This document shows, piece after piece, positions 1,523 to 54,902 of a stretch of 64,000 bases of DNA. Under the pieces are notes generated by a model, which saw only the letters and a program-made list of their open reading frames with translations, was not told the DNA's origin and did not search any database. Source of the DNA: Ostrea edulis. Taxonomy: Eukaryota. The position numbers and the translations under genes were made by a program. Positions within the stretch are counted from its first letter, which is position 1. Every line of letters begins with the position of its first letter. The DNA lies in NCBI RefSeq assembly GCF_947568905.1, contig NC_079165.1, positions 12,338,001 through 12,402,000 of the forward strand, given 5' to 3'.

Positions 1523-4500
1523 ATGATCTTTAGCCTCTGGTGGATAACGTGTACATTTATCATCGTCTTCCCTACCTCATCAGGTAAGAAAAAAAAATCT
1601 TCATCTCTTTTGAGAATTTTACTATAAAATCCAATTGAATAATTACCACTGATTTAAATAAAAAAGGAATTGGTTGTAAAAAAATTTTTTACGTCCCTCG
1701 CGAGAATATTTCACTCACATGGAGACAGTGGCCGATTTAGAGGAGGGCACAACCCCCCCTCCCCCTAAAATTTTCAAATTTAAGGTAAATCGCGGTATCT
1801 TGATTCGGAAAATGTACTAAACGATAAAAGAAGCAATAATTTCTTCCACTCCCGGAGAAATAAATGGCAAAATCCTTTGATTTTTTGAATTACTTTATTA
1901 GGAGAACCTAATTTTTTCCAAAAAAACCCCCTAAAAATTTGGGTCATTTTATAAATTTCACCTTATTAAAATCATTGAAAATAGTACAAATGACTTGATA
2001 AGAGAAATATTTCAAGCCCCATAAAATCTGTAAAATCCGGGGGCTTCGCCCCCTGGACCCACACCAGGACTTCGCCCTGGACCTACTGCCTCATAAAGTG
2101 GCGCCCCCCCCCCCCCCCCCCCCCCTGTAACCACAATTCCTGGATCCGCCCCTGGGAGATGCCACCATTGCCGGTGAAGGGCTGCAAAATTTAAGGCTTT
2201 TAATCTTTGAGGAGGGAGGGATCTTTATCGCGCCACACCTGTTGTGACACAGGACATGGGTTTTTGCGGCCTCATCCGAAGGATCCCCCCCCCCCCCCCA
2301 TTTAGTCGCCTCTTACGATAAGCAAGGTGTATTGGGGACCTATTCTTACCCGGATCCCCATGGGAAAAATTGGACTTAAATAGAAATAATAACTATCCCA
2401 GGTCAATTTTTTTTGTTCATGAGCAGAATTAGAATATATTCGGGACTGTGAGATGATCGAGAACACTGAAAAATAAAAAAGAAAGAGAATGATCTGAATC
2501 TAGCAGTGAAAAAAAAACCCCAGTTAGATATAGAGAACTCTCTCTTTCTCTCTCTCATTTGAACTTGTTCGCTTAAAATGAATAAAGTTTTATGTTTATA
2601 TATCGGAACAAGTAGCGGTAACTTACTTTAACAGTGTGGAACGCTCTACTCAAAAAGTAAGAATTCGTTAATATTAATTAAGGGTGTGGAAAATATCAAC
2701 ATAATGTATTATGTAATAATACTCATGAAGAATGGTTAATGAAGACCAAAATGAAATACTTCAAGGACGTATAATGTCCGCGGGGTGTGTTAGATACGTG
2801 TGAAATTTTGATAGAGATCGGGAGACATGGTTAAACTCATAGGGTTCAACCATACCGGCTTAAAAGGGTCAGATGAACTTAGACCCGCGAGATTAGCAGT
2901 AATATTAAATCTTTACATCATAAATAAAAGACAATTGTTATCCATCCTCTCAATAAAAGCAAGCTTTCGTTGAATTCTGGTAACATGTCTGCGTTTAACA
3001 TTTAATTCTTTTGTACGATATTCCAATTATCATCATTATTATTTTTTGGCCTTTTAAACGTGAAAGGACAACGCCTTCTGAAGGTCAGATGTGCAAAAAC
3101 ATGAGAGAATAATATCTACGTGTTTCATTGCCCACAATGCTTTATAATAGTTCAGAAAATCCACAATTGATAAAACCAAACCCGGATAGATATTGTACAT
3201 CCGCTTAAAGTTGACAGATTAAAGGGAAATACCCCCCCCCCTCCCCCCGAATCCGGGTTACATACACAAAGTGTTTTCATATTCGAAAAATGGATTCCGT
3301 GTTTAATATCTGTTGTAAATCCCAACCCAATGAAATTCCAAATGTAAAACATCCATGGACGAGAGGTCTTGGAATTTTTATACCATATCTATGAAGAGAA
3401 ATCAATTCTACATACAATGTAGATCCAGATTTATAAAATACAATAATAGCTTTCACTATATTCATCTACTCAAAGTCATCCGAACAAAGTAAAAATTTAC
3501 TTAGTCATTGATTTAATTTAATGAATAAATATAACGATCCATTCGGACAAAACCCATTTGTAAAGCGCTTAGTTAACATTGATGAGATTCTCGTGTATTT
3601 TAGCGTTGATGGAGAATTTATATCCCATTAACAGTAAATAATAAAACCGATACACCAAGTGTGGCGACTGATTTGGTTAATGAGTTACATCGTGTACAAA
3701 AAGGAGCACATTGATTTTTTCCTGCATCATCTTTTATTGAAATTCTTGTGATTCTTCAATTGAAAAAAAGTCACGGTTCGTTATAGATTGAAAAGACAAG
3801 GTTTTCTAAGGCCAGTCTCTTTATGAAGCTGCAATTCAGATCGATATTGATTAATTCTTTTATTATGAAGACTGGCATATTGAGTTGTCTGTTAGAAAAT
3901 TCTGCTATTTTGTTTGAATTAACACAAAACCCCATATACATTACAGATTCGTTTTCATTGAACTTTCATCGCATTCTAATTGCCAATTTCTTATCTAAGA
4001 TCAATCATTGAAATTTGAATTCTTTTAAACTCAATTCTTGTTCACCGAGAACCTCATATTCACTGTTCATATATTTCTATCTATTTCTTCTTCATATATG
4101 TAATGCTTCTGTCTCTCTGGTCGGAGGATTTTTGTGTGCAATTCGGATTTATTTTTCAAAATCTTAAAGCAACCGATTCTTTAATAAATTCTATTTAAAC
4201 GTGATATAACGTTTATGTAAATATTCAATTCAAACACACAACTATTGCATAATTGCACATTTCTTTTTTCTATATTGGATGTACCGAAAATTTGAAACTT
4301 TCACAAAAGAAACCCTGAATTGCATGTTCAAGAAGCTTAATCTTTAATATGCCTTTTATTGTGCAATTTTTCAAATCCATTTATCATTCTATAATCACAA
4401 TGCACCTGGGTTTTGAATGCAGATTTGCAATCAACGCTGTGGGATTAAGAGAGCTAAGCAAATCTAGGGAACGTTCTGTACATGATCACCCGAAATATCG

Positions 4501-7500: not shown

Positions 7501-10500
7501 ATCCCCATGTTGTTTTGTGTTCCACATTCTTCTCGTATGCATGAGGAGCGCGTGTAGATAAACTTGTTATGACCCATTAATCTTCGAAGGTGGTCAAGTG
7601 AAAGGATTTTAATTACATTCAACAATTCATCTGCAATTCATGAGCAAAATGCAGCGAAGTTTAAATGGCACAACCCGGGCAATTTGTAGTTCGATTACAA
7701 TTAAAAAGCACGGTGCATTGTATTGCTGTATTGGTTGATTTACCTCCAAATGAACAATGAAAATTCAAAACCCCATTATTTCGTAAAATGTAGAACAGTT
7801 TCCAGATTATTTGTACTTGATGTTATCCAATTCGTCATAACAATAAGCATTAATGTTAAAACGTTCGAAGATCTTTTTTTTTTTTTTACATGAATTAAAA
7901 ACAATTAGATTTCCGAATGTATTATATACGGTTCATAGTAAATAGATTATTTTAATATGGTCCTCTCCTTTGATAGAGGCAATCATGTTTCGAAAGAATG
8001 TTTTATACATGATACATGTAATGAGACGTACACGTATATCTTAGTCTATACCAAAGTGATCCAATTTCCTTGAATATTTTACACAGAAATATTCCCGGGA
8101 AAACACTGCTTATTAAAAAGGTGAACGTGTATAATTTTAAATTTTCTTTTCTCTTTATCTTCTAGAAAGCACGTGCACATTTCCTTCAGAGATAGAGGGG
8201 GACTGGTACAGTGGCCACAAAGGAAAGCTGACCTTCAACTCCACGCACCTGACAGGTTACCCTATCTATATGTCCAATGCCGTGCAATCGTTAGATTTCG
8301 AATGCTACATAAACAGTGACAGAAAATATCTTCTGAGGTACAAAAAGGCTTCTCTTTGAAGTCATAATGTAAATTTAGAAGCTAGACTTCATTCTTAGAC
8401 GTTTCGAATTTTCATATTCTTTATGCAACGTTGCTTTAGGCGATTCTAACATATTGGAGAGTTTCTGAGACGACAAAATACTTTTTTCTCTGTAATTCAT
8501 AATATTACTGCTGATATCAGGTATCTTGGTATCGATTAACTTACACCGGTACTGTCTCCTCCTAAGGTTCAAGCACTCTAGTGGGGTAGGTAATGAACAT
8601 ATGAACTGCGTTCCTTTATAATCCCAGAGACGACAAAAAGACTTAAGCACTAGATAAGGAAACATTGGTATTTTAATGGGAGGTAAACAACCTTCTTATC
8701 TGAGTGCCCGCTGATACATTAGAGCCAGGTGGTGGATTTACGTATCAAGATTGATAAACCTCCATCCTAAATAAAGAAATGATTAGAAATATGTTGCGGA
8801 CTCATACATCGATGATTGATTGAAATAGAATGACTTGTATCTGAGTGCGTACTCCTTTGACTTTAAGTGATTAATTGTTGAATCCAGAAATGAAGAGATT
8901 AAAGTCCTAAAGATAAGCATATTTACAAGATATATTAGATTTCTTACAGACCATGTAATCTACATGTGAAAATAATGTACCCTAAAATTGATCCTGTTTC
9001 TTTATTTTGTGTGACGGGATAAACTCTCGGGACTTTCGGTATGATTATGTGCCGTCAACGAATGCAAATTACATGGTTTTTATACTGGTTTTTTTTATTG
9101 TGCCTTTGGTAAAACAAGAAATACAAAATTTTCATTTGTTAATCTCGTCCATAATACTGAATCATGTCAATTCTTAATTCAAATTCTATCGTCATTATAA
9201 CGATCTAGTTTGGCAATATAACTTGACATTGGGTCAAGTGCTGTCTGGCGTGTTTCTTACCTATTGTTAAGCGGTTCTTTACACACTGATTTTGACTACG
9301 GAATTACTCCGTTTACCTGATCAAGATGTAGGGCTCACAGCGGGTGGGACCGATCTACAGGAGATATTTACTCCTCCTTGCTTACTCCTCCTACGCACCT
9401 GATCCCACCTCTGGTATATCCAGGGGTCCATGTTTGCCTAAATCTTTATTTTGTACTCCATATGGGAGTTATGGGGTTACTCACTGTTCGTTATCTTCAC
9501 TTTACCATCACTTTTTCATACAAGTGAAACAAAACTAGAAGACTTAAAATTTTTGTTTGCGAAAATAGAATCATCAATTTTACATTATACGATTTGTTGA
9601 TTTCAGAGCTACGGATACCGCCCTTGTGTTTGGGCAATACATTCGTGGTTATATATGCCTCGAATTATGGAGAATTTCCAGCACAAAGTACTACTACTAT
9701 CACGGAACAAGTAAGTGCCATCTCTAGATCAAATAAAGAACATATGAATAAACAAGATGATTTATATCATTTCAACGACAATGACAACTCCTCAATATCT
9801 CTCTGTAAACTAAATGAATAGAAAGCTTAGGCATCTGAAACTCAATACCAAGTCTGGTTCGAAAATTCTTTTAACTAATACAAAACATCGGTCTGAAACG
9901 CAATATAATGCTGAGTATTGTCTGATAATGTTAAGAAAAACAAATTCAATGAAAAATGCACTTATCAAGAAATTTAATGAAAATGCACTTATCAACAAAG
10001 GTATCAGTTTGACCAACAATGACAATGTCTATGGCCGAGTGGACGCCATCACAGTAGACACTACCAGTGCTTGTAATGAGGTTGAGCCCTATAATAAGGG
10101 CTCATTTGTTACCTTAGTGAAGAACGGTACGGAACGCCTTGGTCTATACCATAAACTGACATGTTCACGGTCTGGTCACTAATAGCGTGTTAAGCAGTTG
10201 TCGGATTTGTTTGGGGCACAGTTATGTGAACATCACACGTACATGTTTCAACCTTCACATAATCTCTGTTACTAATATGATTAATTTTGACAAAACGTGA
10301 ACTTGCACGTACGAAGAGGTTTTGAATTGATTAAGAAAATATTTTTTTTAAAGATAAAGTTTTTGAGCATGGTTGAACAATAAATGTTTGTATTGATGTC
10401 CAAAAGGACAGCGCTTAAATGTAACGAGAAAAGGATAAAGCCGTGACCAACAATCTGCTTTGATAGAACTTAACCTTGTTTTGTCATGCTCTAGCGAACT

Positions 10501-13500
10501 TAACCTTGTTTTGTCATGCTCTAGCGAACTTAACCTTGTTTTGTCATGCTCTAGCGAACTTAAACTTGTTTTGTCATGCTCTAGCGATCACGGCAACAAA
10601 CAATGACAACGTTAGGGGCTTCATTGACTCTTTTGCAACCGGAACAGTTGAGAACACTTGTGATATAGTAGAACCTTACAACACATCAGCGTTTGTTATA
10701 CTAGTTAAAGATGGTAAAAATAGCTATATATCTATCTATCTCATTTATGCTTTTGATTTCGTGTTGTGGAGATGTATTTGTTGTATAGAATATAGCGTTT
10801 TATTTTTGCATGGAGTGAAGTTTCCTCCTGGGTATGGTGTATCCCTCTCTACATCAATTCAGCTTTTTTGTTGTTATTCTACACCCTGTAGACCTGGTTA
10901 AATGTGGCTTGGATTATCATATATTTATTGTTATTTTGTATGCAAATGTGCACAATCTATTTCAAATATTGAATTTATTTTTAGAGTTTTTCATTCAATT
11001 TTATGTTTTTGGATGTTGTTGGTTGCACTGTTTTCAATTTGCGGTGTGTGTTTTTCTGTTGTGTGATTTTTGTTCACTTTAACTTCTATTTACATGCAAT
11101 TTGTCAGACTTCACTATGAACGATACTCAAATGCACATTTAATCAAATGCAGATTACAAGGTGAGAGTACTTTTATATTCTATTTGATATATGTAATATC
11201 TATACATGTATAAATATTTTTAGTGTAAGATCTTATCATAGAATAGTCTATCAGTCTACCTTTATGTAATTCTGCCAAAATGAAAGCATTGTATGCATAA
11301 ACGATTACTTTATTAACAGTATATATTTGTTCAGTGTTCTACAATGACTGAAAATTATATATCAAGTTAAAACACAATAGAAATTATTCAAACATATCTT
11401 ATATTTAATTACTAGGGTCGATCTCGACGGGGGCATCTGAAGCCACATGCGCAACCGACCTACTGGCATCATTTAGCGCTGTTTCGATTACAGACTCAAC
11501 CGGAAGTACGTCATGTTCCAATAACGTGATGGATGGTTGTACCGACAAAACAGAAATGAGATTTACATATGATGCCGGATGTGGAAATACCCTCAAATTC
11601 TCAAGTAAGTTAAAAAATTGACATTTACCAATATACTATAAGCAACATAGAGTATATCTGGTAATATACTACAAGTAACATAGAATATATCTGGTAATAT
11701 ACTGTAAGTACATACACTATATCAGGTAATATACTATAAGTACATACAGTATATCAGGTAATATACTATAAGTACATACACTATATCAGGTAATATACTA
11801 TAAGTACATACTATATATCAGCTAATATACTATAAGTACATACAGTTGATCAGGTAATATACTATAAGTAACATAGAGTATATCTGGTAATATACTATAA
11901 GTACATATACTATATCAGGTAATATACTATAAGTACGTGCTCTATATCAGGTAATATACTATAAGTATATACAGGATATCAGGTAATATACTATAAGTAT
12001 ATAGAGTATATCACGTAATATACTATAAATAAAATAGTATATCAGTCAACCGGTCAACAGGGGATGCTTACTCCTCCTAGGCACCTTGTCCCACCTCTGG
12101 TATATCCAAGGGTCCGTGTATACCCAACTCTCTATTTTGTATTGCTTATAGGAGTTATGAGATTGATCACAGTTCGTTATCTTCACCTTTCATTAAGGAA
12201 TATAATTGTAGCTGATGGGTTTTTGATAGATGTATGATTATAATTGTAGCTGATGGTTCTTTGGTAGATGAATGAATAGCATTGTAGCTGAAGGTTTTTG
12301 ATAGATGAATGAATATAATTGTAGCTGATGGTTTTTGGACCTGTATGCACAGCGTGTCAAGCGGCGGGTACACGTATTTGTCCTTGTGGAACAATGACAG
12401 CACTGTTGTTGGGAAAACGACCTATTCATATAACTCGGGGGACAACTATCAGTTTGCCTGTTTAGTGAGTAAAGCATATCAACAGAAAAGAAATTACCAA
12501 ATCTCTAAAGGAGACAATAGTGTATATAACGATTTTTTTTTCAAGTTTTGTAGAAAAATCGAACTATCATACAATGTTTTTAAAATTCTGCTAAATCTCA
12601 GAAAATATATTACAGGTGATTAGCGGAGCTTCGGCGACAATGTTTCCGAATTTTTGTTCAGACAGTACACAGACAACCACTACAGTTGCCTCCCCTGGGC
12701 TACAGTTGTCATTCACAAGTGCCACCACAACGTGTTGTAAGTTTTCCATTGAAATATGGATTCTAACTGTATACACCTTCATACCATGACTGACAGACGT
12801 CTCCATATTAAACAATATTCAATCAATCATACCATGAATTTTGTCTACAATATGATACATATCTAGTCGTTATACAAATGAAAGGTGAATACATTGCTGA
12901 ACTATGTCAATCAAGATCATCAATATAAGTATAAATTTAGTACACCAAGAATTGTTATCAGTGGCCTGACTTTCAATTTCTTTCCAGTTACAGTAAAAAA
13001 CGATTTCAGCTAACACATCTATGATGATTTCACGCTTAAAGCGAAGTGATTTCTATTCCATGTAGTTATATTATGAATTCATTGGATGTAAAACTTATAC
13101 GGTACCAATTTTGATGCACCAGATGCGCATTTTGACACATAATGTCTCTTTAATGATAACGAATTATCCTTATAACGAATCAAAATTGCTCATATCACCA
13201 TCACTTCGCTATAAGCGTGTTTTACTGTATTTGAAGCACGGTTATCAATTTGACATGTTACTGCTTCAGATGAAGAAGTAGAGGGAGGATCAAGCGCAGT
13301 GTATTACATCACGATAGTGTTAGGATCCTTGTTCATCATAGCTCTGATTATCTTAATCATAATCCTAAAGAAAAAAGGATACTGTTCCCTTCAAAAATGC
13401 AAGAAGCAGAGACCCGGATCTCCAGAAAGCACTGTAGAGCAGGGAGAACATGTGACTAATACTGTTTTTAAAATGAACAAATTGGACCCAATCCCTGGAT

Positions 13501-13709
13501 TCAAGGCCAAGAGACCTCTTCGTATTGGACCCATTGTAGAACCTAATTTGGATCCTCTTCCGAAGGTTGAACCATTGTATGCACTGTCTGATAGAAAGGA
13601 CACTACAAAACCACCCAAAAGAGGTTCGATTGGCAGTCTTTTTACTTGTGATGTCTCAACGTTCTTAATTGATAAACACATCCCTCCAACTGAAAATGTA
13701 AAGCGTTAA
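1523..13709 (+). CDS. Gene A: type-I single-pass membrane protein with Cys-rich ectodomain (DUF7042/7043/7044-like, tentative), ~451 aa with one copy of exon 4
   Basis: Phase-consistent GT-AG exons: 1523-1583 (MIFSLWWITCTFIIVFPTSS, signal peptide), 8166-8337 (ESTCTFPSEIEGDWYSGHKGKLTFN...DFECY...KYLLR), 9607-9710 (ATDTALVFG...YICLELW...YYYYHGT), 10001-10126 and/or 10585-10713, 11416-11604, 12325-12464, 12616-12736, 13270-13709 (TM VYYITIVLGSLFIIALIILIIIL, then KKK and the tail). Homologous exon by exon to genes B and C. Confidence 0.88.
1684..2364 (-). mobile_element. SINE copy (same family as 441-699) interrupted by a DNA element
   Basis: Halves 1684-1725 and 2155-2364 rejoin to the same sequence as 441-699. 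Confidence 0.8.
1726..2154. mobile_element. Non-autonomous TIR DNA element with 5-bp TSD
   Basis: Ends are CAGTGGCCGATTT and GGATCCGCCCCTG (imperfect TIR). GGAGA is duplicated at 1721-1725 and 2155-2159. Confidence 0.85.
4667..5759. repeat. 32-bp minisatellite, ~34 copies (TACATGTACAGCCTAGTATCTTCTGTATATAC)
   Basis: Direct periodicity of 32, for example 4681 and 4713. Confidence 0.97.
6030..6176. repeat. Degenerate (AAC)n low-complexity tract
   Basis: Runs of aacaacaac and aacaataac. Confidence 0.8.
6560..6812. repeat. 42-bp tandem repeat with an internally inverted block (~6644-6719)
   Basis: Units of CCAAGGCTCCAAACGAGGATCTCCAAACTCTATAATGAGAAC. The central units read CTCATTATAGAGTTTGGAG..., the reverse complement. 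Confidence 0.9.
9178..9503 (+). mobile_element. 3' fragment of Penelope-like retroelement
   Basis: Same tail as 17495-18480 (cacctgatcccacctctggt...ttcgttatcttcac), preceded by the decayed end of the ORF (...YNDLV..YNLTLGQVLSGVF). Confidence 0.75.
10001..10126 (+). CDS. Gene A exon 4A, duplicate of exon 4B (10585-10713)
   Basis: Encodes ISLTNNDNVYGRVDAITVDTTSACNEVEPYNKGSFVTLVKNG. Phase 1-1, donor G|gtacgg, weak acceptor (caacaaag). Confidence 0.55.
10466..10585. repeat. 30-bp tandem repeat x4 containing the exon 4B splice acceptor
   Basis: GAACTTAACCTTGTTTTGTCATGCTCTAGC at 10466, 10496, 10526 and 10556. Confidence 0.95.
11630..12040. repeat. ~32-bp minisatellite (ATATCAGGTAATATACTATAAGTACATACACT), ~13 copies
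   Basis: Visible periodicity. Confidence 0.92.
12045..12192 (+). mobile_element. Penelope-like 3' tail fragment
   Basis: ggggatgcttactcctcctaggcacc...cccacctctggtatatcc...gttcgttatcttcacctttc. Confidence 0.75.
12201..12338. repeat. 37-38-bp tandem repeat x4 overlapping the acceptor of the 12325 exon
   Basis: ATTGTAG|CTGATGGTTTTTG recurs with AG at 12210, 12248, 12286 and 12323. Confidence 0.9.
13085..13158. repeat. Short dispersed repeat, second copy at ~23548-23584
   Basis: gtaaaacttatacggtaccaattttgatgcaccag is identical in both places. Confidence 0.75.
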
Positions 13710-14483
13710 AGATGTTTTCTATTTTTTAAAGTATATTTTCCTATAACTATAATTATATTTATATATGAATTGTATGAATTAACAATCCAAAGCTCTATAT
13801 TGATAATTCTATATTAAATGTTAGTGTTGTGTTCTTGCTGTAACATTCTCTCCACAGTGTTAACTTTCTAACATGTGTGACTGTGTTGTGTTATAGATGA
13901 GCATTCATTGTTACACAGAGTATTGTAAACAGTACTAGTCACCCACTTCCTGTGTTGAACTGTATTCATCTGCTAATTTCTTTTTCAATGTTGGGAATAG
14001 GCAGATATGGAAACAAGGTTTTTAATCATAATGGGTGATTTCATAGGTGAATGCATGTACATGTAGATAATTTGTTAATTTATAATGTGATGTACATGAT
14101 CGATTCATTGCTTACATTCAATATATTATCATAACGGTTCTAGAAACATTATGCATCATCGACTTATTATTGTAACATTCACAATTATCGTGTGGGTAAT
14201 TGCATCGAAAAGTATAAAATATGTGTACATGCAAGTTTGAGAGAGAGAGAGAGAGAGAGGTAACAGTGGTGGCGCATTTTTATATTTGTTAGAGTTACAC
14301 CCCTTTGTCCCACAATAACCCGCATTATTAATTTCCGCCTGGTATAACCACAGTTTAGTTAACCATGTCATGTTCCCCTTGACTATTTACCCTTTACGCA
14401 ATCGTCTTCCAATTTTACCCCTTATTCACCCTTTCGTAATTAAATCACTAACTGGAAATATTTCTCGAAATTTTGTCTTGTAG

Positions 14484-14662
14484 GACTGAGGGAAATGTAT
14501 CGTTCTGATGACTGCTTTCTTTACCATTCATATGATCAATTGTATCATTCATACGAGAAGCTGTACAGCTCACAGGAGTCCGTTTATCATCCAGAAGTAA
14601 AATGTGAAAGCCCTAATTACACAAATTATCCTTCCGTGATATGTGAAAGTCCCAATCACTAG
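14484..14662 (+). CDS. Orphan Tyr-rich exon candidate
   Basis: Acceptor ttttgtcttgtag. Phase-1 frame is GLREMYRSDDCFLYHSYDQLYHSYEKLYSSQESVYHPEVKCESPNYTNYPSVICESPNH*. No upstream partner exon identified. Confidence 0.3.
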
Positions 14663-15106: not shown

Positions 15107-15597
15107 AAATAGCTCACAACACAAATATGTAGATCGGAGCACATTTTTGCACGGTGAGTTAATCTATTTATCTCGTACTCTCACTTCTCGTGACTAACCC
15201 AATTCTGATTTATTTTTGTGCTCATTGAGAATACGACTGATTCGTCATTACAGATGCCGATGCTATATCAGTAGAGAGCGTAGAGGATGAGGATAATCCG
15301 TTTACCTTCTACAACATCGCCAAGTTCGTGCTTCTTCCGAAAATTGTCTCCAAGAAGAGCTTTGATGTCGGGGCGCTGGCAGATCCGAAGCGAAACACGT
15401 TGCACGATGTTTTAGAAGTAAAGAAAACGAAGTTAAAACAGGAGAGCAAAGCCGCGGAGGAACAGGGAAAGAAATATGAAAAAGGAAAAGAAACAAATAA
15501 AGAAAAGACAAAGGACAAACCTAAACTCACTAAACAAAAATCACAAGAACCCAAGCCTGGCAACAAAAATCGTAGAAATTCAAGAAAGGGAAAATGA
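15107..15597 (+). CDS. Two orphan exons (15107-15153, 15254-15597) encoding an acidic then Lys-rich C-terminus; possible alternative tail of gene A
   Basis: Strong splice sites (tttgtcatag|, |gtgagt, cattacag|). The joined frame is NSSQHKYVDRSTFLH-DADAISVESVEDEDNPFTFYNIAKF...KGK*. Homologous to 22262-22620. Confidence 0.6.
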
Positions 15598-16139: not shown

Positions 16140-16407
16140 TATCTAAATCCTTTCGTATATTCGGATATTTCGTGTGATGTACATTTGTCTGACCTGCTGT
16201 TGAAACCGTTGTTTTTACAGACTTTATTTGATACTTTTATAAGGATTAAACAATAAACGTTGCGGCGTCTCTTTCTTCTTGGATTTTGTTTACTTTTTGC
16301 TCTTTTATTTGTATACCATTTCTAAATATTCATGAATGACATTCATTTATTATGGTTCAAAATTATTGTCGGCCTCAATTTTCGTATATTAGTTTCGCCG
16401 ATACGAA

Positions 16408-16575
16408 ATGAAAAGTGAAGATAACGAACAGCGATCAATCTTATAACTCCTATAAGCAATACAAAATAGATAGTTGGGCAGACACAGACCCCTAGACACA
16501 CCAGAGGTGGGACCAGGTGCCTAGGAGGAGTAAGCATTCCCTGTCGACCGGTCACACCCGCCATGGGCCCTATAT
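16408..16575 (-). mobile_element. Penelope-like 3' tail fragment
   Basis: Reverse complement of the tail at 12045-12192. Confidence 0.75.
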
Positions 16576-20059: not shown

Positions 20060-21533
20060 CGAGGGCAAATCAATAAGTACCCAGCCTAATTTATTTCCGG
20101 TTGCGATCCACCTCTTCTTTTTCGTTGTAATTGCCCTCTAGTGAGAACTGAAAAGTAAGGGTTCTTCCCATTGACCCACTCCTTAACTGCCATCACAACT
20201 TCGTCAGACCGGAAATGACGTCCACGAATATCCTTTTTCAAGTTTGGGAATAGGAAGAAGTCGCTAGGAGCTAGGTCAGGCGAATAGGCAGGATGTGGTA
20301 TTAATTCATACCCGTTTCGCTCTACAGCATCCATTGCAACTTTGCAAGTGTGGATTCTCGCGTTATCCTGTTGCAGCAAAACACCTTTAGAGAGTTTACC
20401 TCGGCGTTTTTGACGGATGGCGGTTCTCATCTGTTCTAGCAAGTTTGCATAGTACACTCCAGTTATTGTACTTCTCTTGGGTAAAAAGTCTAATATAATA
20501 ACACCTTTTGCGTCCCAAATTACTGTGGCCATCACCTTTCCAGCAGATGGTTGCATTTTGAACTTCTTTGGCCTCGGGGACCAAGGCCCTACCCACTCAC
20601 GACACTGAGCTTTATTCTAAGGCTGATAATAATGAACCCAAGTTTCATCTACTGTCGCAAGACGCAACAGAAAATCATCTTTTGATCTAAAATGCTTCAA
20701 CAAGGTGCTGCAAACTGAAGCTCTGGTTGCCATTTGCTCATTGCTAAGGGATTTGGGGGACCCAACGGGCTGTTAGCTTGCGCGTACCTTAACGATCATG
20801 TAAAATTCTTGAAACGCTACCATTGATTGATTGATTGATGTTTAGCGCCACACTCAACAATATTTCAGTTATATGGTGGCGCCCCGTTTTTTTATTGGTG
20901 GAAGAGAGAACCCAGATACAATGTACCTGGGAAGAGACCACCGACCTTCCGCAAGTAAACTGGGAAACTTTTTTACTTACCGGCGCGAGCGGGATTCGAA
21001 CCCGCGCCGAGCAGAGATGAGAGGCCGTGTGATTTAGAGCGCGATACTCTAACCACTCCGCCACGGAGGCCCCTCGCTACCATGTGAAATGCCTAATGTC
21101 TGCGTTTTTTCTTCCACCTGAATTTGCCTATCAGAGTATACCAGTTCCCGAACTTTCTTACACTTTTCTTCGTCGGTGGCATCCAGTGGGCGTTCAGACC
21201 TGGCATCATCTTCTAAAGACGTTCTACCGTGTTTGAATTCCCCTACCCAGAATTTAACCTGCGCATAAGATGGTGTAGAAGACCCATAACCATCGACTAA
21301 CTCGCCGTGTATTTCCTTGCCTGTTTAACCTTCTAAATACAAGTACCGAATTATAGCACGGTACTCAACTTTAGTTGAAAATCATACCGTTGCATCACTA
21401 GCCATATTTGACATTCAATATCTTTTTAAAGAATGACTCGATACGCGTGCAATTATGTACCCAGGTATGAAAATCGTGACCGTCTTGGTCAATCGGAAAT
21501 GGGATATGCTGGTTACTTATTGACTCGCCCTCG
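20060..21533 (-). mobile_element. Mariner (D,D34D) transposon, full-length but inactivated
   Basis: TIRs CGAGGGCAAATCAATAAGTACCCAGC / GCTGGTTACTTATTGACTCGCCCTCG, each flanked by TA. Transposase motifs ARWVP, VDETW, QDNA and YSPDLAPSD. Contains a frameshift, an in-frame stop and a SINE insertion. Confidence 0.95.
20824..21074 (-). mobile_element. Full-length tRNA-derived SINE (V-SINE-like) inserted in the mariner
   Basis: Head GGGGCCTCCGTGGCGGAGTGGTTAGAG...GGTTCGAATCCC, (CAAT)n tail, and 9-bp TSD CGCTACCAT at 20815-20823 and 21075-21083. Confidence 0.92.
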
Positions 21534-23125: not shown

Positions 23126-26100
23126 TCAAGTTTCGGTATCGAGCGTATCCGTCGAATTCGCTGCAATGTTCGTGAATGACACTTCCTGGTTCTGCGTAGA
23201 AGGTTTCTTCTTGAAGAAATCGCACATCTCTTTTCTGAAGAATTTGATGATAATCACAATGAAACCAATAATTATGATGACGAAGACTACAATTGCAAAA
23301 TAGATAGCCCAGTTTGTGGTAGGTTCCCTTTTCTTTCTAGGAGGTTTTGTGTGCCCTGTTCCTCTACCAGGCGGAGGAGCTGAATACAGAGAGAAGATAG
23401 TCCAATTCATTTCTATTTTGCATTTAACATATCCGGTAGTGATACTACGGTATTATTTTACGAACAGTAAGGGATGTTTCCATTCAAAAGAAATTAATTT
23501 GCATTGTCATTTTACAAATATCAATCTTTCTGAACGTATCATATTGCATGTAAAACTTATACGGTACCAATTTTGATGCACCAGTATGTAATATGAAAAA
23601 TAGTTAAAGTAAAATAGGTACAAAACAGACTAGCACTATATACATTGTAAATTACATGTTTATTCATTTATTTTTATTTTTGGCTAGCTAATGAATTAGT
23701 TTTTAAGGAGCGAATTATTCGTCCAATCGGTATTTCCACAAAGGACGAAGATATGATGGGCAACCCCCCCCCCTCTCTCGCTCTCCTTCCCTTGCATATG
23801 TAGGTTAATGTTAATTGCATCTTTATCATTATCCTTGTGTACATGTAAATCATAATATATCATTTACCTGGCGTAGTGGGTAGACATGTTTCTGAAACAA
23901 AAAAGAAATCATCGAAAGATTGAAGTTGAAATATTAAAGACCACCTTCATTTCATATGACACATCAATCACAGTGACAAAGCTCAAAGCTTTACATAGTG
24001 ATGCTTTACCGTTGATTTGCTTTGATTTCATTTTGAGAAATTCCGAAGCATGTGGTACATCGCTGCAGGTATCGTTAAATAATTGAAATACTGTAGAGGA
24101 CTCTTCTTGGGATATTTCCTATAAAGATTATAAATCAATTTAGAATATTTCTGATGGTTGCATTCTATATTAGAGTTTTTACATTGTTAATTACGTTCAA
24201 TTATTTTCAAAAAACATCTTTCATGTCAGATTTTTGTTTCATGTGATGCGTTGAATTTGATAACTCCTCCGTTTAACAAATCAATATACAAATAATTTGT
24301 CAGTACTAACAATGCAAATGAATCCATGACTAATTGATGAAGCAGAAAATGCATCGTCTGTCCATGTGTACAAATAGGTGATGTCATTCACTGTTTTGTG
24401 AAACAGACAGTGAAGGAGAAGAACATCTGAAAATAACAAAATGAATTACATTGATTTTATAGTGCAAAAATTAGCATACTCCTTACACTTACATTATGTC
24501 TTTTAACTGATTCGAAACGCGAGAACATAGTCTGCGCAGGATCAATTTTTAGAATCGAGGCAGGCTACTGGCGAATCAGTCGATGTTGTAGGGGTTTCAA
24601 CAGTGTCGTTTAAAAGAAAGGTGAAGATAACCAACAGTGATCAATCTCATAAATTCTATAAGCAATACAAAATAGATAGTTGGGCAAACACGGACCCCTG
24701 GACACACCAGAGGTGGGATCAGGTCATTAAAGGCAATATATCTTAAATTCTATGGTCGTTATAATTATACAACCCGTCATTAGGTTCAATGCTGTTTTAT
24801 GTTTTTCATACTAATTGTGTAACCGTTCTTTACACACTAATTTTGACTACCGGATGTAAAGCTTAAATTAATAAAGAGCTTGGTATTCTTTTTGGTATTC
24901 ACGGGATTGATTACCGTTCGTTATCTTTACTTTTTCATGTATATAGAAATGTATCACTACCTGGAATATAAGTATTGGATTGACATGATGAACTGGTGGA
25001 GATGGCGACTTGTGTGTTCTTCGCACATCCAGTGACGTAACTATCTATACATGCATTTTCTGTGCCGTTTTCATCTGCAGATAAACTCACGTAGGAATTC
25101 TTCAAGACGCTTGGACAGTCTACACTAACTATGTCCTCGCTCGACACTTGAAAATAAAATATTCTATGCATATATGCGCTTGGATTTTGTTTGTTTATTT
25201 ATTCATTTTTGCTTTCTTTCTGACATTGCATATGCCCAATAATAAAATTAGTATATTTCGTTTGCCATAAAGAAAATTAAAGATAAATGTAAAATGATCA
25301 ATTCTTTCTCATATACAAATATGACTCACCATTTTTAATTAGGCTATACATGTTGTCTATTGTGTTGGGGACAGTACATACGTCATCCATTGATGCATTC
25401 ATCTGATTCGACAAAGCATATATATTCTCGTTGACTGTTTTCTCTAGAGGTGTTGCAACATGATACATGTAATTGTCTGATTTCACTCTATCAAAACTAA
25501 GACAAAAGTACACGCTAACTTTGATGGAAAACACATCCACGTCTCGAGGAGATCTGTAATGACGTAACAAGATAAAAACGTGTTGCAAAACCTACACTCA
25601 TATTCTACCTTAAGATAGAGAGAGAGGAGGATGAGAGAAAAAAATAATCAAGGAATTATTCGAAAGGTTTATGAATTCTACTTAACCTTCTTATGATTAT
25701 ATCAGATAGGCAATTAGTTAATATTGGCAGCAAGACGAGCGAAAGCTTACTTAAGCAGGTAGTGCGTCCCATTGTTTTGAACACAGTGGAAATCCAGGGA
25801 AATTACTGCCGGTAAAATGACCGGATAATCATATATCACAGAGTCGCTGAACCTCAGGAAACCTTTGTCGGAGCTGATCCACACGCCTCTTAGATCCGAC
25901 GGGAACTGACATGACGAGGCATATATTGCTGTTAAAATATTTATTGGGAAAAATATGGCAAAGTGATTGATTTTGTGTTTCTTTTTACTTGAATTGCTCA
26001 TACTCAATATTCTTTAAAGTGCATTGAAACTAGAAACGTAGCAAAACATTAATATTTGATCAATGAAATAAATAATGCATACACAGCATCTTAAAAGTAT

Positions 26101-27337: not shown

Positions 27338-30188
27338 TTAACAAGATTCAGATCCAAATGATACATCTTCATCATCCACTTCATCTCTGCTGATGATGGA
27401 AATGGTGGAAAATGGACTTGCTGCTCTAAAGATGGCCGAGTCAAAGCTGTAGAGACTGAGTCCATCTGGTTTTCTTGGCATTTTCCCGCGCATATAATCC
27501 ACTATGGTGTCAGTATATATGCACGTGATTTTTGGAGGAGGATGGATGGGTAGATTATCGATACTGAAGTCAGACTTGAATAAAGGAACAATTTGAATTG
27601 ACCGTTTGGGTCTGAAGTAATTGACAGGTTTGGAAACGGTGACCATTGCCTTTTTATGGTCAAAGCGTTGATGTCTCACTTTTTCCCCTTCCCCCATGAC
27701 AAGTGCTTTCTCTTCTTTTTTCTTCTTCATGTAAACTTTTAGACGTTTGCATAGCAATGCAAAAATCACGATCATGACAATTATAAACAGTCCCAGTAAT
27801 ATGAACAGGTAGTTAAGATCGGCAACAAACGGAGCTTCCGTGGTAGCTGAGAAAGGAAAATGTCAACACTGTGTAAAATATTGTCTTGATTTTAAAATTG
27901 ATGTTTAATTGAAAACAAAATCTCAACATTCTTAAGAGAGAAAATGCCTGATGAATAGACTTACGTACTTGGAATCAGAACTTGACAAGTATCTGAAAAA
28001 AGAGTTAGTGCTTGATATAAAAGGAAACAAAAGTATCTTTTCCTCTAGAAAAGAGGGACGTTATAGTGAATTGCATAAATGCTGGTCAGCTGTAAATCAT
28101 TCTGTTAAACCTGTGATGTCTTTCATTTCTAATGAAGAGGTCTCTGACGGATATTCTGTAAAGTTTATTGAATTTCCACAAAAGTTTGGTCTCTCATCCA
28201 GAAGCACCGTGCCATTCATATAATTTGTCATTTTCTACAAGTAGAGAGTTATAAAAAGCCATGATGCGTGTAATTGATATTGCACTGTGTAGTTTCTAAG
28301 CATCAGCAGTGGAATGAACAACATTGATTTCAGAAGTTTGTGGTTTAACTTACAAAACATGAAAATCTGAATGTTGAAGACGACAGCGTTTCATCGTTAT
28401 TCCATACAGAAAAATACGCCTGGTCATCAATAGTTCTTGTGTAAATGCATGTATACAGACCTCCGCCTGCAAACAAAACAGTCTTATTAGTTCCAAAACA
28501 ATTCTTTTGTTTCTGAAAATTATTTCGTGGATTTTTCGATTTTCATGAAACTCTTATTTTTCATTTTTTTTTTACAGTACAAACAAGAACACCTCCAATC
28601 AGTACCTGAGAGAGTTTTTTGTGTGCATTCATCTTGAGTGAAATTAAGCATGGTCTTGTTGGTGCAGCCATCGAGTTGTGCCGCCGCACAATTTTCGGAT
28701 GTACCCGACTGGCTTGTAAATGTAACATTGCTGTACACCTTCTGTAGGGCCTCAGGACACAGAGTTTGTATGGCATTATTTTCCACAGCGTCTATGAAAA
28801 TTACCCAGGATTCTTGTCACATAATATTATTGTCATCCGTAAATATTGAGTAGCGTTTTGGAAAACAATGACAAAGAGAGCCCTTTCGCTTTGGTATCCA
28901 TTGTCTTTGTGAATATGTACTTAAATGCTTATTGGTTTAGCGATGTGTGACCATTAAGGAAATGACCTCTATATGATTCGCATAATTACATCCGATATTT
29001 CTGTACTAAATTCATTATTTGGCGTACGTATGCACTACGTCATATGACATACCTTTTCGTAGTAGAACAATAAAATTGACGGGGTCTATGTAGCTACGAG
29101 TACAAATATTCTCATGGGAGTTGGATTTATCTTCAGCGATACCGACCATATTTTCTCGAATCAAGTTATCTACAGCTAAAACAAAAATTCGCAAGTTTAA
29201 AAAAAAAACCCACTTTTTATGGTTACTTTCATTTATTTCATCTCTACACACATGTAACGACATTGATGGAATAATGTACTCTACCTGTTGCATGGTAATA
29301 GTAGTTCAACTGGTCATTCACATTGTAGATATCAAGACAGATGTAAAAGAAGACGTTGGTTCCGAATATCACATTGAAGTTCACAGATCTACACAAAGCT
29401 TGATATTGTTAGTGAGGAAACAAATTTCTTTCTGTTGCAATAAACAACCAGGACAAACAAAACATATATCGAGTGATAAAAGTAATAATTTTCAAAGAAT
29501 GTGTGGTGCCCATAATTATTTTATATAAATTCCATGGATTCACTCAATTTGTTGTACTGATGCCGTGAAATCGACAGGGAATGCTTATTCCTCTTAGACA
29601 CCTGATCCCACCTCTGGTGTATCTAGGGGTTTGTGTTTGCCCTTCTCTTGAGTTTTGCATTCTTTGCGGGAATTATGAGAGATTGATCACTGTTCGCTAT
29701 CTTCACCATTTTACTTTTAATGTCCATGTTAAATGTGCTTACCTGATTGTGTACCGGTTGGTACCGACTTCAGTGAGACAAGTGAAATTATAGTAATCAA
29801 TTGTTGGATTGCTCGGGTCTGCAGACGGAATATAAACCTTGTAGTTATATATATAATCTGAGGTAATGGTTAGGTTTCCTCTTTCCGCACTTGTCCAGTC
29901 TCCCACCAAATAACTCGGAAAAGTGCACGTTCCCTCTGTATCATAAGATTAGAACAAATTAATTCAGGCAAATTAAATAAACTTCAGCGTGATTCAATAC
30001 ATGTAGACCTCTGTAACGTTTTATCTGCATGTTCTATATGAAATATTATATCTTACATGCAGCCATATATAGAAGATTCAGATATATTTATGCACGGTTA
30101 TATTTAAGGACATATTACCTGCAAATAGTATATTCAGCCCAAATACACACATAGCTTCAAAGAAATATGTCTTCATATTGAAAATCAT
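27338..30188 (-). CDS. Gene C: paralogous type-I membrane protein, ~473 aa
   Basis: Phase-consistent exons: 30188-30119 (MIFNMKTYFFEAMCVFGLNILFA), 29935-29743 (EGTCTFPSYLVGDWTSAERG...NFTC...RYTIR), 29388-29285, 29175-29053, 28791-28606, 28466-28354, 28234-28111 (weak donor gtttaa), 27846-27338 (TM YLFILLGLFIIVMIVIFALLC, long tail). Same intron positions as gene A. Confidence 0.88.
29568..29712 (+). mobile_element. Penelope-like 3' tail fragment in gene C intron
   Basis: cagggaatgcttattcctcttagacacctgatcccacctctgg...ttcgctatcttcacc. Confidence 0.72.
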
Positions 30189-50944: not shown

Positions 50945-51100
50945 AATTATAATTATAATACATGTATAGAATTATATGATACATGTATAGAATTATAATA
51001 CATCTATAGAATTATAATACATGTATAGAATTATAATACATGTATAGAATTATGATACATGTATAGAATTATAATGCATGTATAGAATTATAATACATGT
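50945..51100. repeat. ~19-bp tandem repeat (TTATAATACATGTATAGAA), ~8 copies
   Basis: Visible periodicity. Confidence 0.92.
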
Positions 51101-51183
51101 GTATGGTCAGGCCTTTCATGGAGAACCAGTGAATGTTCCTTTATAAGAATTATCATAGAGAGAGTTCATTCTCTAGGTTAAAG

Positions 51184-51184
<1 letters not shown>

Positions 51185-51258
<74 letters not shown>
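51185..51258. repeat. (CT)n microsatellite
   Basis: Direct reading. Confidence 0.97.
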
Positions 51259-51259
<1 letters not shown>

Positions 51260-54200
51260 GCTCTCTACACATACTCATGTTTATTTATACATACACATGT
51301 TTATCTATACATACTTATGTTTATTTATACATACACATGTTTATCTATACATACACATGTTCATCTATACATACACATGTTTATCTATACATACTCCTGT
51401 TATCGATACATACACATGTTTATCTACACATACTAATGTTTATCTATACCTACTTATGTTCATCTATACATACACATGTTTATCTACACATTCTCATGTT
51501 TATCTACACATTCTCATGTTTATCTATACATACACATGTTTATCTATACATACTTATGTTTATCTATATATACTCATGTTTATCTATAGATACACATGTT
51601 TATCTATACATACTTATGTTTATCTACACATTCTCATGTTTATCTATACATACACATGTTTATCTATACATACTCCGTTATCGATACATACTGATGTTTA
51701 TCTATACATACTGATGTTTATCTACACATACTAATGTTTATCTATACATACTAATGTTTATCTATACATACACATGTTTATCTATACATACTCCTGTTTA
51801 TCTATACATACATATGCTTATCTATACATACACACGTTTATCTATACATTCACATGTTTATCTATACATACACACGTTTATCTATACATACTCATGTTTA
51901 TCTATACATACACATGTTTATCTATACATGCTCATGTTTATCTATACATGCTCATGTTTATCTATACATACTCATGTTTATCTATACATACACATGTTTA
52001 TCTATACATACTCATGTTTATCTATACATACTCATGTTTATCTATACATACACACGTTTATCTATACATACTCATGTTTATCTATACATACTCATGTTTA
52101 TCTATACATGCTCATGTTTATCTATACATGCTCATGTTTATCTATACATACTCATGTTTATCTATACATACACATGTTTATCTACACATGCTCATGTTTA
52201 TCTATACATGCTCATGTTTATCTATACATACTCATGTTTATCTATACATACACATGTTTATCTACACATGCTCATGTTTATCTATACATGCTCATGTTTA
52301 TATATACATACTCATGTTTATCTATACATACACATGTTTATCTATACATTCTCATGTTTATCTATACATACTCATGTTTATCTACACATTCTCATGTTTA
52401 TCTATACATACTCATGTTTATCTACACATTCTCATGTTTAATTATGCATTCTCATGTTTATCTATACATATTTATGTTTATCTATAGATACACATGTTTT
52501 TCTACACATTATCATGTTTATCTATAGGTACTAATGTTTATCTACATATTCTCATGTTTATCTATACATACTCATGTTTATCTATACATACTCATGTTTA
52601 GCTATACATACTCATGTTTATCTATAGATACACATGTTTATCTATACATTCTCATGTTTATCTATACATTCTCATGTTTATCTATATATACACATGTTTA
52701 TCTATACATACTCATGTTTATCTTTACATACTTATGCTTATCTATAGATACTTATGTTTATCTATACATACTGATATTTATCTACACATTCTCATGTTTA
52801 TCTATAGATACTCATGTTTATCTATACATACTCATGTTTATCTATACATTCTCATGTTTATCTATACATACTTATGTTTATAGATACATACTCATATTTA
52901 TCTACACATTCTCATGTTTATCTATAGATACTTATGTTTATCTATACATACTCATATTTATCTACACATTCTCATGTTTATCTATACATTCTCATGTTTA
53001 TCTATACATACTCATGTTTATCTATACATGTACATACTGATGTTTATCTATACATACTCATGTTTATCTATACATACTCATGTTTATCTATACATACACA
53101 TGTTTATCTATACATACTCATGTTTATCTATACATACTCATGTTTATCTATACATACTCATGTTTATCTATCCATACTTATGTTTATCTATACATACACA
53201 TGTTTATCTATACATACTCATGTTTATCTATACATTCTCATGTTTATCTATACATACTCATGTTTATCTATACATACACATGTTTATCTATACATACTCA
53301 TGTTTATCTATACATTCTCATGTTTATCTATACATACTCATGTTTATCTATACATACTCATGTTTATCTATACATTCACATGTTTATCTATACATACACA
53401 CGTTTATCTATACATACTCATGTTTATCTATACATACTCATGTTTATCTATACATACTCATGTTTATCTATACATACTTATGTTTATCTATACATACTCA
53501 TGTTTATCTACACATACTTATGTTTATCTATACATTCTCATGTTTATCTATACATACTCATGTTTATCTATACATACATATGTTTATCTATACATACTTA
53601 TGTTTATCTATACATACTCATGTTTATCTACACATACTTATGTTTATCTATACATTCTCATGTTTATCTATACATACTCATGTTTATCTATACATACTTA
53701 TGTTTATCTATACATACTCATGTTTATCTATACATACTCATGTTTATCTATACATACTCATGTTTATCTACACATACTTATGTTTATCTATACATACACA
53801 TGTTTATCTATACATACATATGCTTATCTATACATTCACATGTTTATCTATACATACACACGTTTATCTATACATACTCATGTTTATCTATACATACTCA
53901 TGTTTATCTATACATACAGATGCTTATCTATACATACTCATGTTTATCTATACATACTTATGTTTATCTATACATACACATGTTTATCTATACATACATA
54001 TGCTTATCTATACATACACATGTTTATCTATACATACACATGTTTATCTATACATACTAATGTTTATCTACACATACTAATGTTTATCTATACATACACA
54101 TGTTTATCTATACATACACACGTTTATCTATATATACACTAGGGCTGGGACGATTCAGGGTTAGCTCGATTCGGTTCGGTTTCGATTCAGAACAGCACGG

Positions 54201-54867: not shown

Positions 54868-54902
<35 letters not shown>

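What the first reader, a model, noticed from the sequence alone, without database searches (positions are those of the whole stretch)
10001..10713. Tandemly duplicated exon 4 in gene A: candidate mutually exclusive exons
Seen: 4A (ISLTNNDNVYGRVDAITVDTTSACNEVEPYNKGSFVTLVKNG) and 4B (ITATNNDNVRGFIDSFATGTVENTCDIVEPYNTSAFVILVKDG) are homologous, both phase 1-1 and both open. Gene C has a single equivalent exon (29053-29175) and gene B a single equivalent segment. Including both would add a second copy of a conserved Cys. Inference: Dscam-style either/or splicing would swap an ectodomain segment. The weak 4A acceptor (caacaaag, preceded by a duplicated TGAAAATGCACTTATCAA) could alternatively mean 4A is minor or dying.
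Basis: partly seen in the sequence, partly recalled or inferred. Interest (0 to 1): 0.7.

Follow-up and report, generated by a model that had tools for sequence, protein, structure and literature searches.

The report
Old alternative exon pair, oyster membrane protein
A flat-oyster gene for an uncharacterised cell-surface protein has two old copies of its fourth exon; related oysters splice in one copy or the other, never both in the assembled mRNAs I saw, which is ordinary either/or splicing already visible in public gene models of other oysters.

Summary
Exons 10001-10126 (4A) and 10585-10713 (4B) are homologous: 50% identical in protein, both phase 1-1, both open, both with AG/GT. The gene is Ostrea edulis LOC125680491.

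The pair is old. Five orthologous loci from four other oyster species keep both exons intact and in the same order. Synonymous sites between 4A and 4B are saturated, and dN/dS across species is 0.05-0.21 for 4A and 0.08-0.42 for 4B. So 4A is not dying. It is the better conserved copy and the ancestral type, because scallop and ark shell have one 4A-like exon.

RefSeq isoforms X1 and X2 of three Crassostrea/Magallana species differ only in 4B versus 4A. Of 23 distinct mRNA-size contig proteins, 10 carry 4A only, 13 carry 4B only, and none carry both or neither.

In O. edulis itself the public models show only 4B (X1, X3) or skipping of both (X2). No RNA run was available, so use of 4A in this species is inferred, not shown.

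Exclusivity is not enforced by a short intron, splice-site type or reading frame, and a Dscam-style docking site was not supported. In a predicted model the exon encodes a strand, a loop with a conserved Cys, and the last strand of a lipocalin-like barrel.

Earlier notes of this scan report similar exon pairs elsewhere in this genome. Ordinary kind; moderate-low interest.

The parts
1523..1583 (+). Gene A (LOC125680491) exon 1, coding part (signal peptide)
   Evidence: tblastn of RefSeq isoform X1 (P0033), residues 1-20, 100% identity
8166..8337 (+). Exon 2, start of barrel 1 (CTFPS...GDW motif)
   Evidence: Splice sites and frame; weak Pfam DUF7044/DUF7043 match; matches P0033
9607..9710 (+). 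Exon 3, ends in phase 1, donor GTAAGT
   Evidence: 82-94% identical in protein to the other oysters
9939..9999 (+). 27-nt tandem repeat (2.2 copies) abutting the 4A acceptor; not evident at this acceptor in the 50 nt displayed for the other oysters
   Evidence: TRF; acceptor contexts of the other species
10001..10126 (+). Exon 4A: ancestral-type copy, 126 nt, phase 1-1, purine-rich acceptor
   Evidence: intact in 5 orthologous loci; dN/dS 0.05-0.21; used in Crassostrea/Magallana mRNAs; closest to the single exon of scallop and ark shell
10466..10587 (+). 30-nt tandem repeat (4.1 copies) that holds the 4B polypyrimidine tract and acceptor AG. It gives four in-frame AGs 30 nt apart.
   Evidence: TRF and the repeat finder; the frame stays open through the repeat (ORF 10467-10898)
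10585..10713 (+). Exon 4B: derived, faster-evolving copy, 129 nt, phase 1-1; the exon used in O. edulis RefSeq X1 and X3
   Evidence: dN/dS 0.08-0.42
11108..11160 (+). Conserved 53-nt exon-like block in intron 4B-5. It has an acceptor-like TTTGTCAG| and a donor-like AAG|GTGAGA, and a stop after 11 codons in phase 1.
   Evidence: Mean pairwise identity is 82% among 5 oysters, against 41-50% in the flanks. It is absent from scallop, ark shell and the paralogues in the window.
11416..11604 (+). Exon 5, start of barrel 2
12325..12464 (+). Exon 6; its acceptor lies in a 38-nt tandem repeat (12198-12337)
12616..12736 (+). Exon 7
13270..13623 (+). Exon 8 (transmembrane helix and tail). It has an internal donor at 13624; read-through would end at the stop at 13707-13709.
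   Evidence: the read-through form is seen in Crassostrea contig proteins
14483..14659 (+). Alternative last coding exon of isoform X3
   Evidence: tblastn of P0034
15251..15597 (+). Last coding exon of isoforms X1 and X2 (ends approximate)
   Evidence: tblastn of P0033
29053..29175 (-). Single exon-4 equivalent of paralogue C
25328..25450 (-). Exon-4 equivalent of paralogue B, fused to its exon 3 (no intron between them)

Best explanation
Exons 4A and 4B come from a tandem exon duplication. It happened in the oyster lineage after the split from scallops and ark shells and before Ostrea, Crassostrea/Magallana and Saccostrea diverged. 4A keeps the ancestral sequence type and 4B is the derived copy. 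Both are kept by purifying selection because each mRNA normally takes one of them. This makes two forms of a type I membrane protein whose predicted ectodomain is two lipocalin-like beta-barrels. In the model the exon encodes a strand, a roughly 12-residue loop ahead of an invariant Cys, and the last strand of barrel 1. The two exons differ mostly in that loop, so the switch most likely changes what barrel 1 binds. This last step is inferred. The choice appears to rest on regulated competition between suboptimal splice sites: a purine-rich acceptor on 4A, and donors matching 6 of 9 consensus positions on both exons, conserved in all five species. No hard-wired constraint was found, so skipping of both exons occurs as a minor product. 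In O. edulis, 4B is the annotated default. Use of 4A is inferred from conservation and has not been seen in RNA.
For: Homology and phases. Synonymous sites between 4A and 4B are saturated (pS 0.93) while pN is 0.32. Both exons are intact with AG/GT in M. gigas, C. virginica, S. echinata (two loci) and S. cucullata. Pairwise dN/dS is 0.05-0.21 for 4A and 0.08-0.42 for 4B, and pairs that include O. edulis give 0.05-0.16 for 4A. RefSeq X1/X2 pairs of 550/549 or 547/546 aa differ only in 4B versus 4A. Of 23 distinct spanning contig proteins, 10 have 4A only, 13 have 4B only, and none has both or neither. Contigs L006-L008 join exon 3, 4A and exon 5, and L009 joins exon 3, 4B and exon 5 on the M. 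gigas locus. Scallop and ark shell have one exon 4, closer to 4A (63% and 49%) than to 4B (38%). AF2 models with 4B (O. edulis) and with 4A (C. gigas) give the same strand-loop-strand layout inside barrel 1, with pLDDT mostly 70-90 for 4B and 56-89 for 4A. The barrels match lipocalin-like folds at Z 5-8. Cys138 is invariant. Four resequenced O. edulis samples show no variant in 4A.
Against: No O. edulis transcript with 4A was seen. RefSeq has only 4B (X1, X3) and skip-both (X2) for this species. No RNA run was on offer, and no transcript fragment with O. edulis 4A is in the protein collection within the length range searched. Saccostrea also lacks an annotated 4A isoform. Nothing found here enforces exclusivity. 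One automated M. gigas model (UniProt A0A8W8KYP7, 592 aa) contains both exons. O. edulis has the weakest 4A acceptor of the five species, with pyrimidine fraction 0.45. The fold assignment rests on predicted models with a shallow alignment and middling Z scores, and the binding role of the loop is inference.
Confidence: 0.72

Rival explanations
1. In O. edulis, and perhaps Saccostrea, 4A has recently fallen out of use. Only 4B-containing and exon-4-less mRNAs would be made, and 4A still looks intact because too little time has passed for decay.
For: There is no 4A isoform in the RefSeq models of O. edulis, S. echinata or S. cucullata. O. edulis has the weakest 4A acceptor of the five species. 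A species-specific 27-nt duplication sits right at that acceptor. No RNA evidence was obtainable.
Against: dN/dS for 4A in pairs with O. edulis is 0.05-0.16, as low as or lower than for 4B. The two Saccostrea 4A exons are identical in protein with dS 0.12. The AG and GT are intact. Four resequenced samples have no variant in 4A, while one has three in 4B. An equally purine-rich acceptor is used in M. gigas and C. virginica. Gene models list only isoforms for which the annotator had reads.
Confidence: 0.17
2. 4A and 4B are two independent cassette exons. All four combinations (A, B, both, neither) would be made in real amounts, and the protein tolerates two copies of the segment.
For: The lengths are 126 and 129 nt, so every combination keeps the frame. 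The intron between them is 349-514 nt, which is too long for steric blocking. Skip-both models exist in two species, and one automated model has both exons.
Against: None of 23 distinct spanning mRNA contig proteins has both or neither. Co-inclusion would give 13 Cys and skipping would give 11, against a family-wide 12. In the models the segment forms integral strands of an 8-stranded barrel. All relatives outside oysters and the paralogues have one copy.
Confidence: 0.07
3. Exclusivity is enforced by competing RNA pairing as in Dscam or 14-3-3xi. A conserved docking site, possibly the 53-nt block at 11108-11160, would pair with selector sequences next to each variant exon.
For: The block is the only strongly conserved intronic element found, at 82% identity. 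In O. edulis it is partly complementary to sites downstream of 4A (10275-10289) and downstream of 4B (10895-10918) (pairs I17 and I3).
Against: RNAduplex energies between the block and the introns (-21 to -23 kcal/mol) fall within the range of shuffled blocks (-17 to -26) in all five species, and the best sites are not at matching positions. No 8-mer is conserved at a matching position in introns 3-4A or 4A-4B. The block has exon-like splice signals and an open frame ending in a conserved stop, which fits a cassette exon better.
Confidence: 0.05

Closest known systems
Two-exon mutually exclusive pairs made by tandem exon duplication (for example FGFR2 IIIb/IIIc, PKM exons 9/10, alpha-tropomyosin exons 2/3; from general knowledge)
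   Same: The exons are adjacent and homologous, have the same phase and nearly the same length, one is used per mRNA, and they swap a structurally integral segment. The pair is conserved across a family of species.
   Different: Both lengths are multiples of three, so reading frame and NMD cannot police the choice as they do in PKM and FGFR2. The intron between them is 349-514 nt with AGs inside it, so steric blocking as in tropomyosin is unlikely. All splice sites are GT-AG. Skipping of both exons is annotated in two species.
Dscam, 14-3-3xi and Mhc clusters in arthropods (docking site/selector RNA pairing; from general knowledge)
   Same: Homologous alternative exons that recode part of an ectodomain, with a conserved intronic element downstream of the last variant.
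   Different: There are only two variants. Pairing of the conserved element was no better than shuffled controls, and the element looks like a small stop-containing exon.
Public RefSeq models: C. gigas LOC105321884 X1/X2, C. angulata LOC128156408 X1/X2, C. virginica LOC111126686 X1/X2
   Same: They are orthologues of the window's gene, and X1 and X2 differ only by 4B versus 4A. They already display the either/or use.
   Different: The O. edulis entry (LOC125680491 X1-X3) lists no 4A isoform. No paper naming any of these loci was found.
Pfam DUF7042, DUF7043 and DUF7044; lipocalin-like (calycin) barrels; APCDD1 (two-barrel type I membrane protein, PDB 8e0r)
   Same: There are sub-threshold Pfam matches to the two ectodomain halves. 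The predicted model has two 8-stranded barrels that align to lipocalin-like folds at Z 5-8, and to APCDD1 at Z 5.3. Topology is type I, with 12 ectodomain Cys.
   Different: All Pfam scores are below the gathering cut-off of 27 bits. Foldseek found no match at E <= 0.001. A PDB sequence profile search found nothing. Z under 8 may only reflect a common arrangement. No ligand is known.

Membership tests
Mutually exclusive exon pair from tandem exon duplication | Adjacent exons that are homologous to each other, with the same phase and similar length | tested here: met
   50% protein identity, E 5e-9; 126 and 129 nt; both phase 1-1
Mutually exclusive exon pair from tandem exon duplication | Both copies have intact splice sites and evolve under purifying selection | tested here: met
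   AG/GT in five species; dN/dS 0.05-0.21 for 4A and 0.08-0.42 for 4B
Mutually exclusive exon pair from tandem exon duplication | Mature mRNAs carry exactly one of the two (in related oysters) | tested here: met
   10 contig proteins with 4A only, 13 with 4B only, none with both or neither, among 23 distinct spanning contig proteins; junctions checked on the M. gigas locus; RefSeq X1/X2
Mutually exclusive exon pair from tandem exon duplication | Mature mRNAs carry exactly one of the two in O. edulis itself | not testable with these tools
   No RNA run was served. Public models show 4B or skip-both only. No fragment with O. edulis 4A was found.
Mutually exclusive exon pair from tandem exon duplication | A known enforcing mechanism: steric hindrance, U2/U12 incompatibility, or frame shift with NMD | tested here: not met
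   The intron is 349-514 nt, all sites are GT-AG, and both lengths are divisible by three
Docking site/selector (Dscam-type) competing RNA structures | A conserved intronic docking site that is complementary to a selector next to each variant exon, in all species | tested here: not met
   Duplex energies are within the shuffled range and the positions are not conserved. There are no conserved 8-mers at matching positions next to 4A. The test was crude (40-nt windows, 5 shuffles).
Pfam DUF7042 / DUF7043 / DUF7044 | Score at or above the gathering cut-off (27 bits) | tested here: not met
   P0033 scores 22.7, 18.9 and 16.8 bits. Some orthologues carry a precomputed PF23069 hit.
Lipocalin-like (calycin) beta-barrel fold | An eight-stranded up-and-down barrel that aligns to solved lipocalin-like structures | tested here: inconclusive
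   The AF2 model has eight to nine strands per domain at pLDDT mostly 70-92. VIA Z is 5-8 (Tp0751 at 8.0, several lipocalins near 6). Foldseek found nothing significant.

The most novel reading that the evidence does not exclude
The pair would be a strictly either/or switch kept for over a hundred million years (the age is my rough estimate, not computed) without any known policing mechanism: no steric block, no splice-site incompatibility, no frame/NMD check and no detectable docking site. It would work together with the oyster-specific 53-nt stop-containing exon just downstream. The gene could then make two membrane receptor forms with different barrel-1 loops, plus a truncated secreted one-barrel form.
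Probability: 0.12. Interest if true: 0.55.

Novelty: new member of a known kind. Interest (0 to 1): 0.3.

Why it matters
It shows that the O. edulis annotation probably lacks one isoform. It also offers a test case for how an in-frame exon pair with a long intervening intron stays exclusive. The biological pay-off is limited until the protein's ligand or role is known.

Tried and rejected
1. The look-up of sequencing runs returned only four DNA-like holders and no RNA run. Laying them gave only polymorphism data.

2. A search for transcript fragments with O. edulis 4A, using the 122-aa open frame around 4A by reference, returned only the genomic ORF itself.

3. A search with the C. gigas 4A segment returned only C. 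gigas cluster representatives, because clustering at 90% hides isoforms.

4. The docking/selector model was tested with RNAduplex of the conserved block against all three introns in five species. It scored no better than shuffled controls (the first attempt timed out).

5. Flanking intron similarity between the two copies is no better than shuffles.

6. Rfam found nothing in 9600-11500.

7. RNAalifold on the conserved block found only an invariant 8-bp helix between its 5' part and its donor-like site. The helix is weak (-4 kcal/mol) and shows no covariation.

8. Fold and sequence searches gave little. Foldseek against the PDB found no match at E <= 0.001, and a PDB profile search found nothing.

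9. Literature searches for the DUF names and for five LOC identifiers found no papers. Papers that mention mutually exclusive exons together with Crassostrea were listed by title and abstract only, and none appeared to concern this gene.

10. My first Pfam scan used the wrong frame for exon 3. This was corrected.

Exons were searched one by one by reference, and the full-length proteins used were those returned by the databases.
Full report
**What is in the sequence**

The window is AT-rich animal DNA. Gene A lies on the + strand.

- Exon 4A is 10001-10126 (126 nt). Exon 4B is 10585-10713 (129 nt).
- Both are open in the frame that takes one codon base from exon 3 (which ends at 9710) and gives one to exon 5 (which starts at 11416).
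- Both have AG acceptors and GT donors.
- Their peptides are 50% identical. tblastn against the window gives E about 5e-9, and the next best place in the window scores E 0.1 or worse.

I rebuilt the gene with consistent phases:

| Exon | Coordinates |
|---|---|
| 1 (coding part) | 1523-1583 |
| 2 | 8166-8337 |
| 3 | 9607-9710 |
| 4A | 10001-10126 |
| 4B | 10585-10713 |
| 5 | 11416-11604 |
| 6 | 12325-12464 |
| 7 | 12616-12736 |
| 8 | 13270-13623 |
| alternative ends | 14483-14659 or about 15251-15597 |

Paralogue C (minus strand) has a single equivalent exon at 29053-29175. Paralogue B has the segment fused to its exon 3.

**Which gene it is**

A search with the last-exon peptide found close relatives. 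A full-length search with one of them then found Ostrea edulis LOC125680491. Its isoforms match the window at 100% over the exons that tblastn mapped. Earlier notes of this scan had already called this genome the flat oyster.

The product is an uncharacterised type I membrane protein. Pfam gives only sub-threshold matches to DUF7044/DUF7043 (N-terminal half) and DUF7042 (second half). No paper names the gene or these DUFs.

**Age and selection**

- Between 4A and 4B, synonymous sites are saturated (pS 0.93; third codon positions identical at 13 of 41), while pN is 0.32.
- The flanking introns of the two copies are no more alike than shuffled sequence.
- I fetched the orthologous loci of Magallana gigas, Crassostrea virginica, Saccostrea echinata (two loci) and S. 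cucullata. All five loci keep both exons, in the same order, open, with AG and GT and the same phases.
- Pairwise dN/dS is 0.05-0.21 for 4A and 0.08-0.42 for 4B. Pairs that include O. edulis give 0.05-0.16 for 4A.
- 4A is 73-78% identical in protein between O. edulis and the other oysters. 4B is only 57-67% identical.
- The scallop Mizuhopecten and the ark shell Tegillarca have one exon 4. It is closer to 4A (63% and 49%) than to 4B (38%).

So 4A is the ancestral type and 4B is an oyster-lineage copy that evolves faster.

**Use in RNA**

No RNA run was available for this stretch. The four holders are DNA-like, and I could only read polymorphism from them:

- No variant lies in 4A.
- One sample has three variants in 4B: one synonymous, V>A and I>M. 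Both replacements lead to residues that other oysters have at those positions.

The protein collection gave the rest.

- RefSeq isoforms X1 and X2 of C. gigas (550 and 549 aa), C. angulata (550 and 549) and C. virginica (547 and 546) differ only in carrying 4B or 4A.
- I read 39 contig-derived proteins from Crassostrea/Magallana sequencing runs. Of these, 23 span exon 3 to exon 5: 10 have 4A only, 13 have 4B only, none has both and none has neither.
- I fetched four of these contigs. They are 2.0-2.2 kb with an uninterrupted 549- or 550-codon frame.
- On the M. gigas locus, L006-L008 (three runs) join exon 3 to 4A to exon 5, and L009 joins exon 3 to 4B to exon 5.
- The one model with both exons is an automated 592-aa UniProt entry.

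For O. edulis itself, X1 and X3 carry 4B and X2 skips both exons. S. echinata likewise has a 4B form and a skip-both form. No fragment with O. edulis 4A exists in the collection in the length range I could search. Use of 4A in this species therefore stays an inference from conservation.

**How exclusivity might work**

- The intron between the two exons is 349-514 nt in the five species. That is too long for simple steric blocking, and it contains AGs.
- All sites are GT-AG.
- Both exon lengths are multiples of three, so the reading frame cannot police the choice.
- The 4A acceptor is purine-rich in every species (pyrimidine fraction 0.45-0.60, against 0.65-0.75 for 4B).
- Both variant donors match 6 of 9 consensus positions, against 8 of 9 for exon 3.
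- This weak-site pattern is conserved even where 4A is demonstrably used, which fits regulated competition.

I tested a docking/selector model using the only strongly conserved intronic block I found. Its duplex energies with the introns are within the range of shuffled controls, and the best sites are not at matching positions. This test was crude, so the model is unsupported rather than excluded.

**What the exon encodes**

AlphaFold2 models were made of O. edulis X1 (4B) and C. gigas X2 (4A), each with a 22-sequence alignment.

- Both give two 8-stranded barrels (about residues 22-157 and 166-306), then a transmembrane helix and a disordered tail.
- VIA-align matches both barrels to lipocalin-like folds at Z 5-8. 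Tp0751 scores 8.0, several lipocalins score near 6, and APCDD1 scores 5.3.
- Foldseek and a PDB sequence profile search found nothing significant. I treat the fold as likely and the APCDD1 likeness as a lead only.
- In O. edulis X1, exon 4 covers residues 113-156. It supplies a strand (123-126), a loop with a short helix, the invariant Cys138, and the last strand of barrel 1 (148-154).
- The two exons agree in the strands and differ mainly in the loop before the Cys. Across species that loop is conserved in 4A and variable in 4B.

One copy gives 12 ectodomain Cys, two copies give 13 and none gives 11. Together with the single copy in all relatives, this argues that one copy per protein is the functional state.

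**Verdict**

This is a real, old, selected alternative exon pair. It is used either/or in related oysters and is already visible in their public gene models, but I found no paper describing it. Earlier notes of this scan report several similar exon pairs in other parts of this genome.

For O. edulis the missing piece is direct RNA evidence for 4A.

Noticed in passing
window 11108-11160 (intron between 4B and exon 5); L001 9488-9539, L002 7229-7280, L003 8693-8745, L005 7794-7846: A 52-53-nt exon-like block with an acceptor-like TTTGTCAG| and a donor-like AAG|GTGAGA. It is 82% identical on average among five oysters, while its flanks are 41-50%. In phase 1 it reads 11 conserved codons and then a conserved TAA. 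If spliced in, it would end the protein after barrel 1, giving a truncated secreted form or an NMD target. It is absent from scallop, ark shell and the paralogues. No transcript evidence was obtained.
   Followed up: partly
window 10466-10587, 9939-9999 and 12198-12337: Three acceptors of this gene (4B, 4A, exon 6) sit in or against tandem repeats of 30, 27 and 38 nt that copy the acceptor region. The 30-nt array gives four in-frame AGs before 4B, and the frame stays open through it (10 extra residues per unit if an upstream AG were used). No repeat is evident in the 50 nt displayed upstream of the 4A and 4B acceptors in the other oysters (the exon 6 acceptor was not compared). The short-read contigs break there, so copy number in other individuals is unknown.
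   Followed up: partly
window 13624, 14483-14659, about 15251-15597, and stop at 13707-13709: The gene has three alternative C-termini: read-through of exon 8, or splicing from an internal donor at 13624 to either of two downstream exons (isoform X3 versus X1/X2). The same three tails occur in Crassostrea contig proteins.
   Followed up: partly
window 9282-9478, 12040-12236 and 13025-13221: Extremely high-copy dispersed repeats lie in the introns, with summed contig depth in the hundreds of thousands to millions in all four DNA runs. Copies also occur near 16400-16550, 24620-24740 and 29570-29660. They are probably an abundant oyster SINE or MITE family.
   Followed up: no
window 20089-21324 (minus strand): Open frames on the minus strand that, from reading the translations alone, resemble a mariner/Tc1-type transposase. 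No family scan was run on them.
   Followed up: no
window 51100-59450: About 8 kb of pyrimidine-skewed satellite with a short unit of roughly 32 nt. It gives long spurious open frames.
   Followed up: no
L003 and L004 (Saccostrea echinata, same scaffold, about 5.5 Mb apart): Two loci encode the identical 541-aa protein, each with both exon 4 copies. This is either a recent segmental duplication or an assembly duplicate. C. virginica likewise has two LOC entries (111126686 and 111126948).
   Followed up: no
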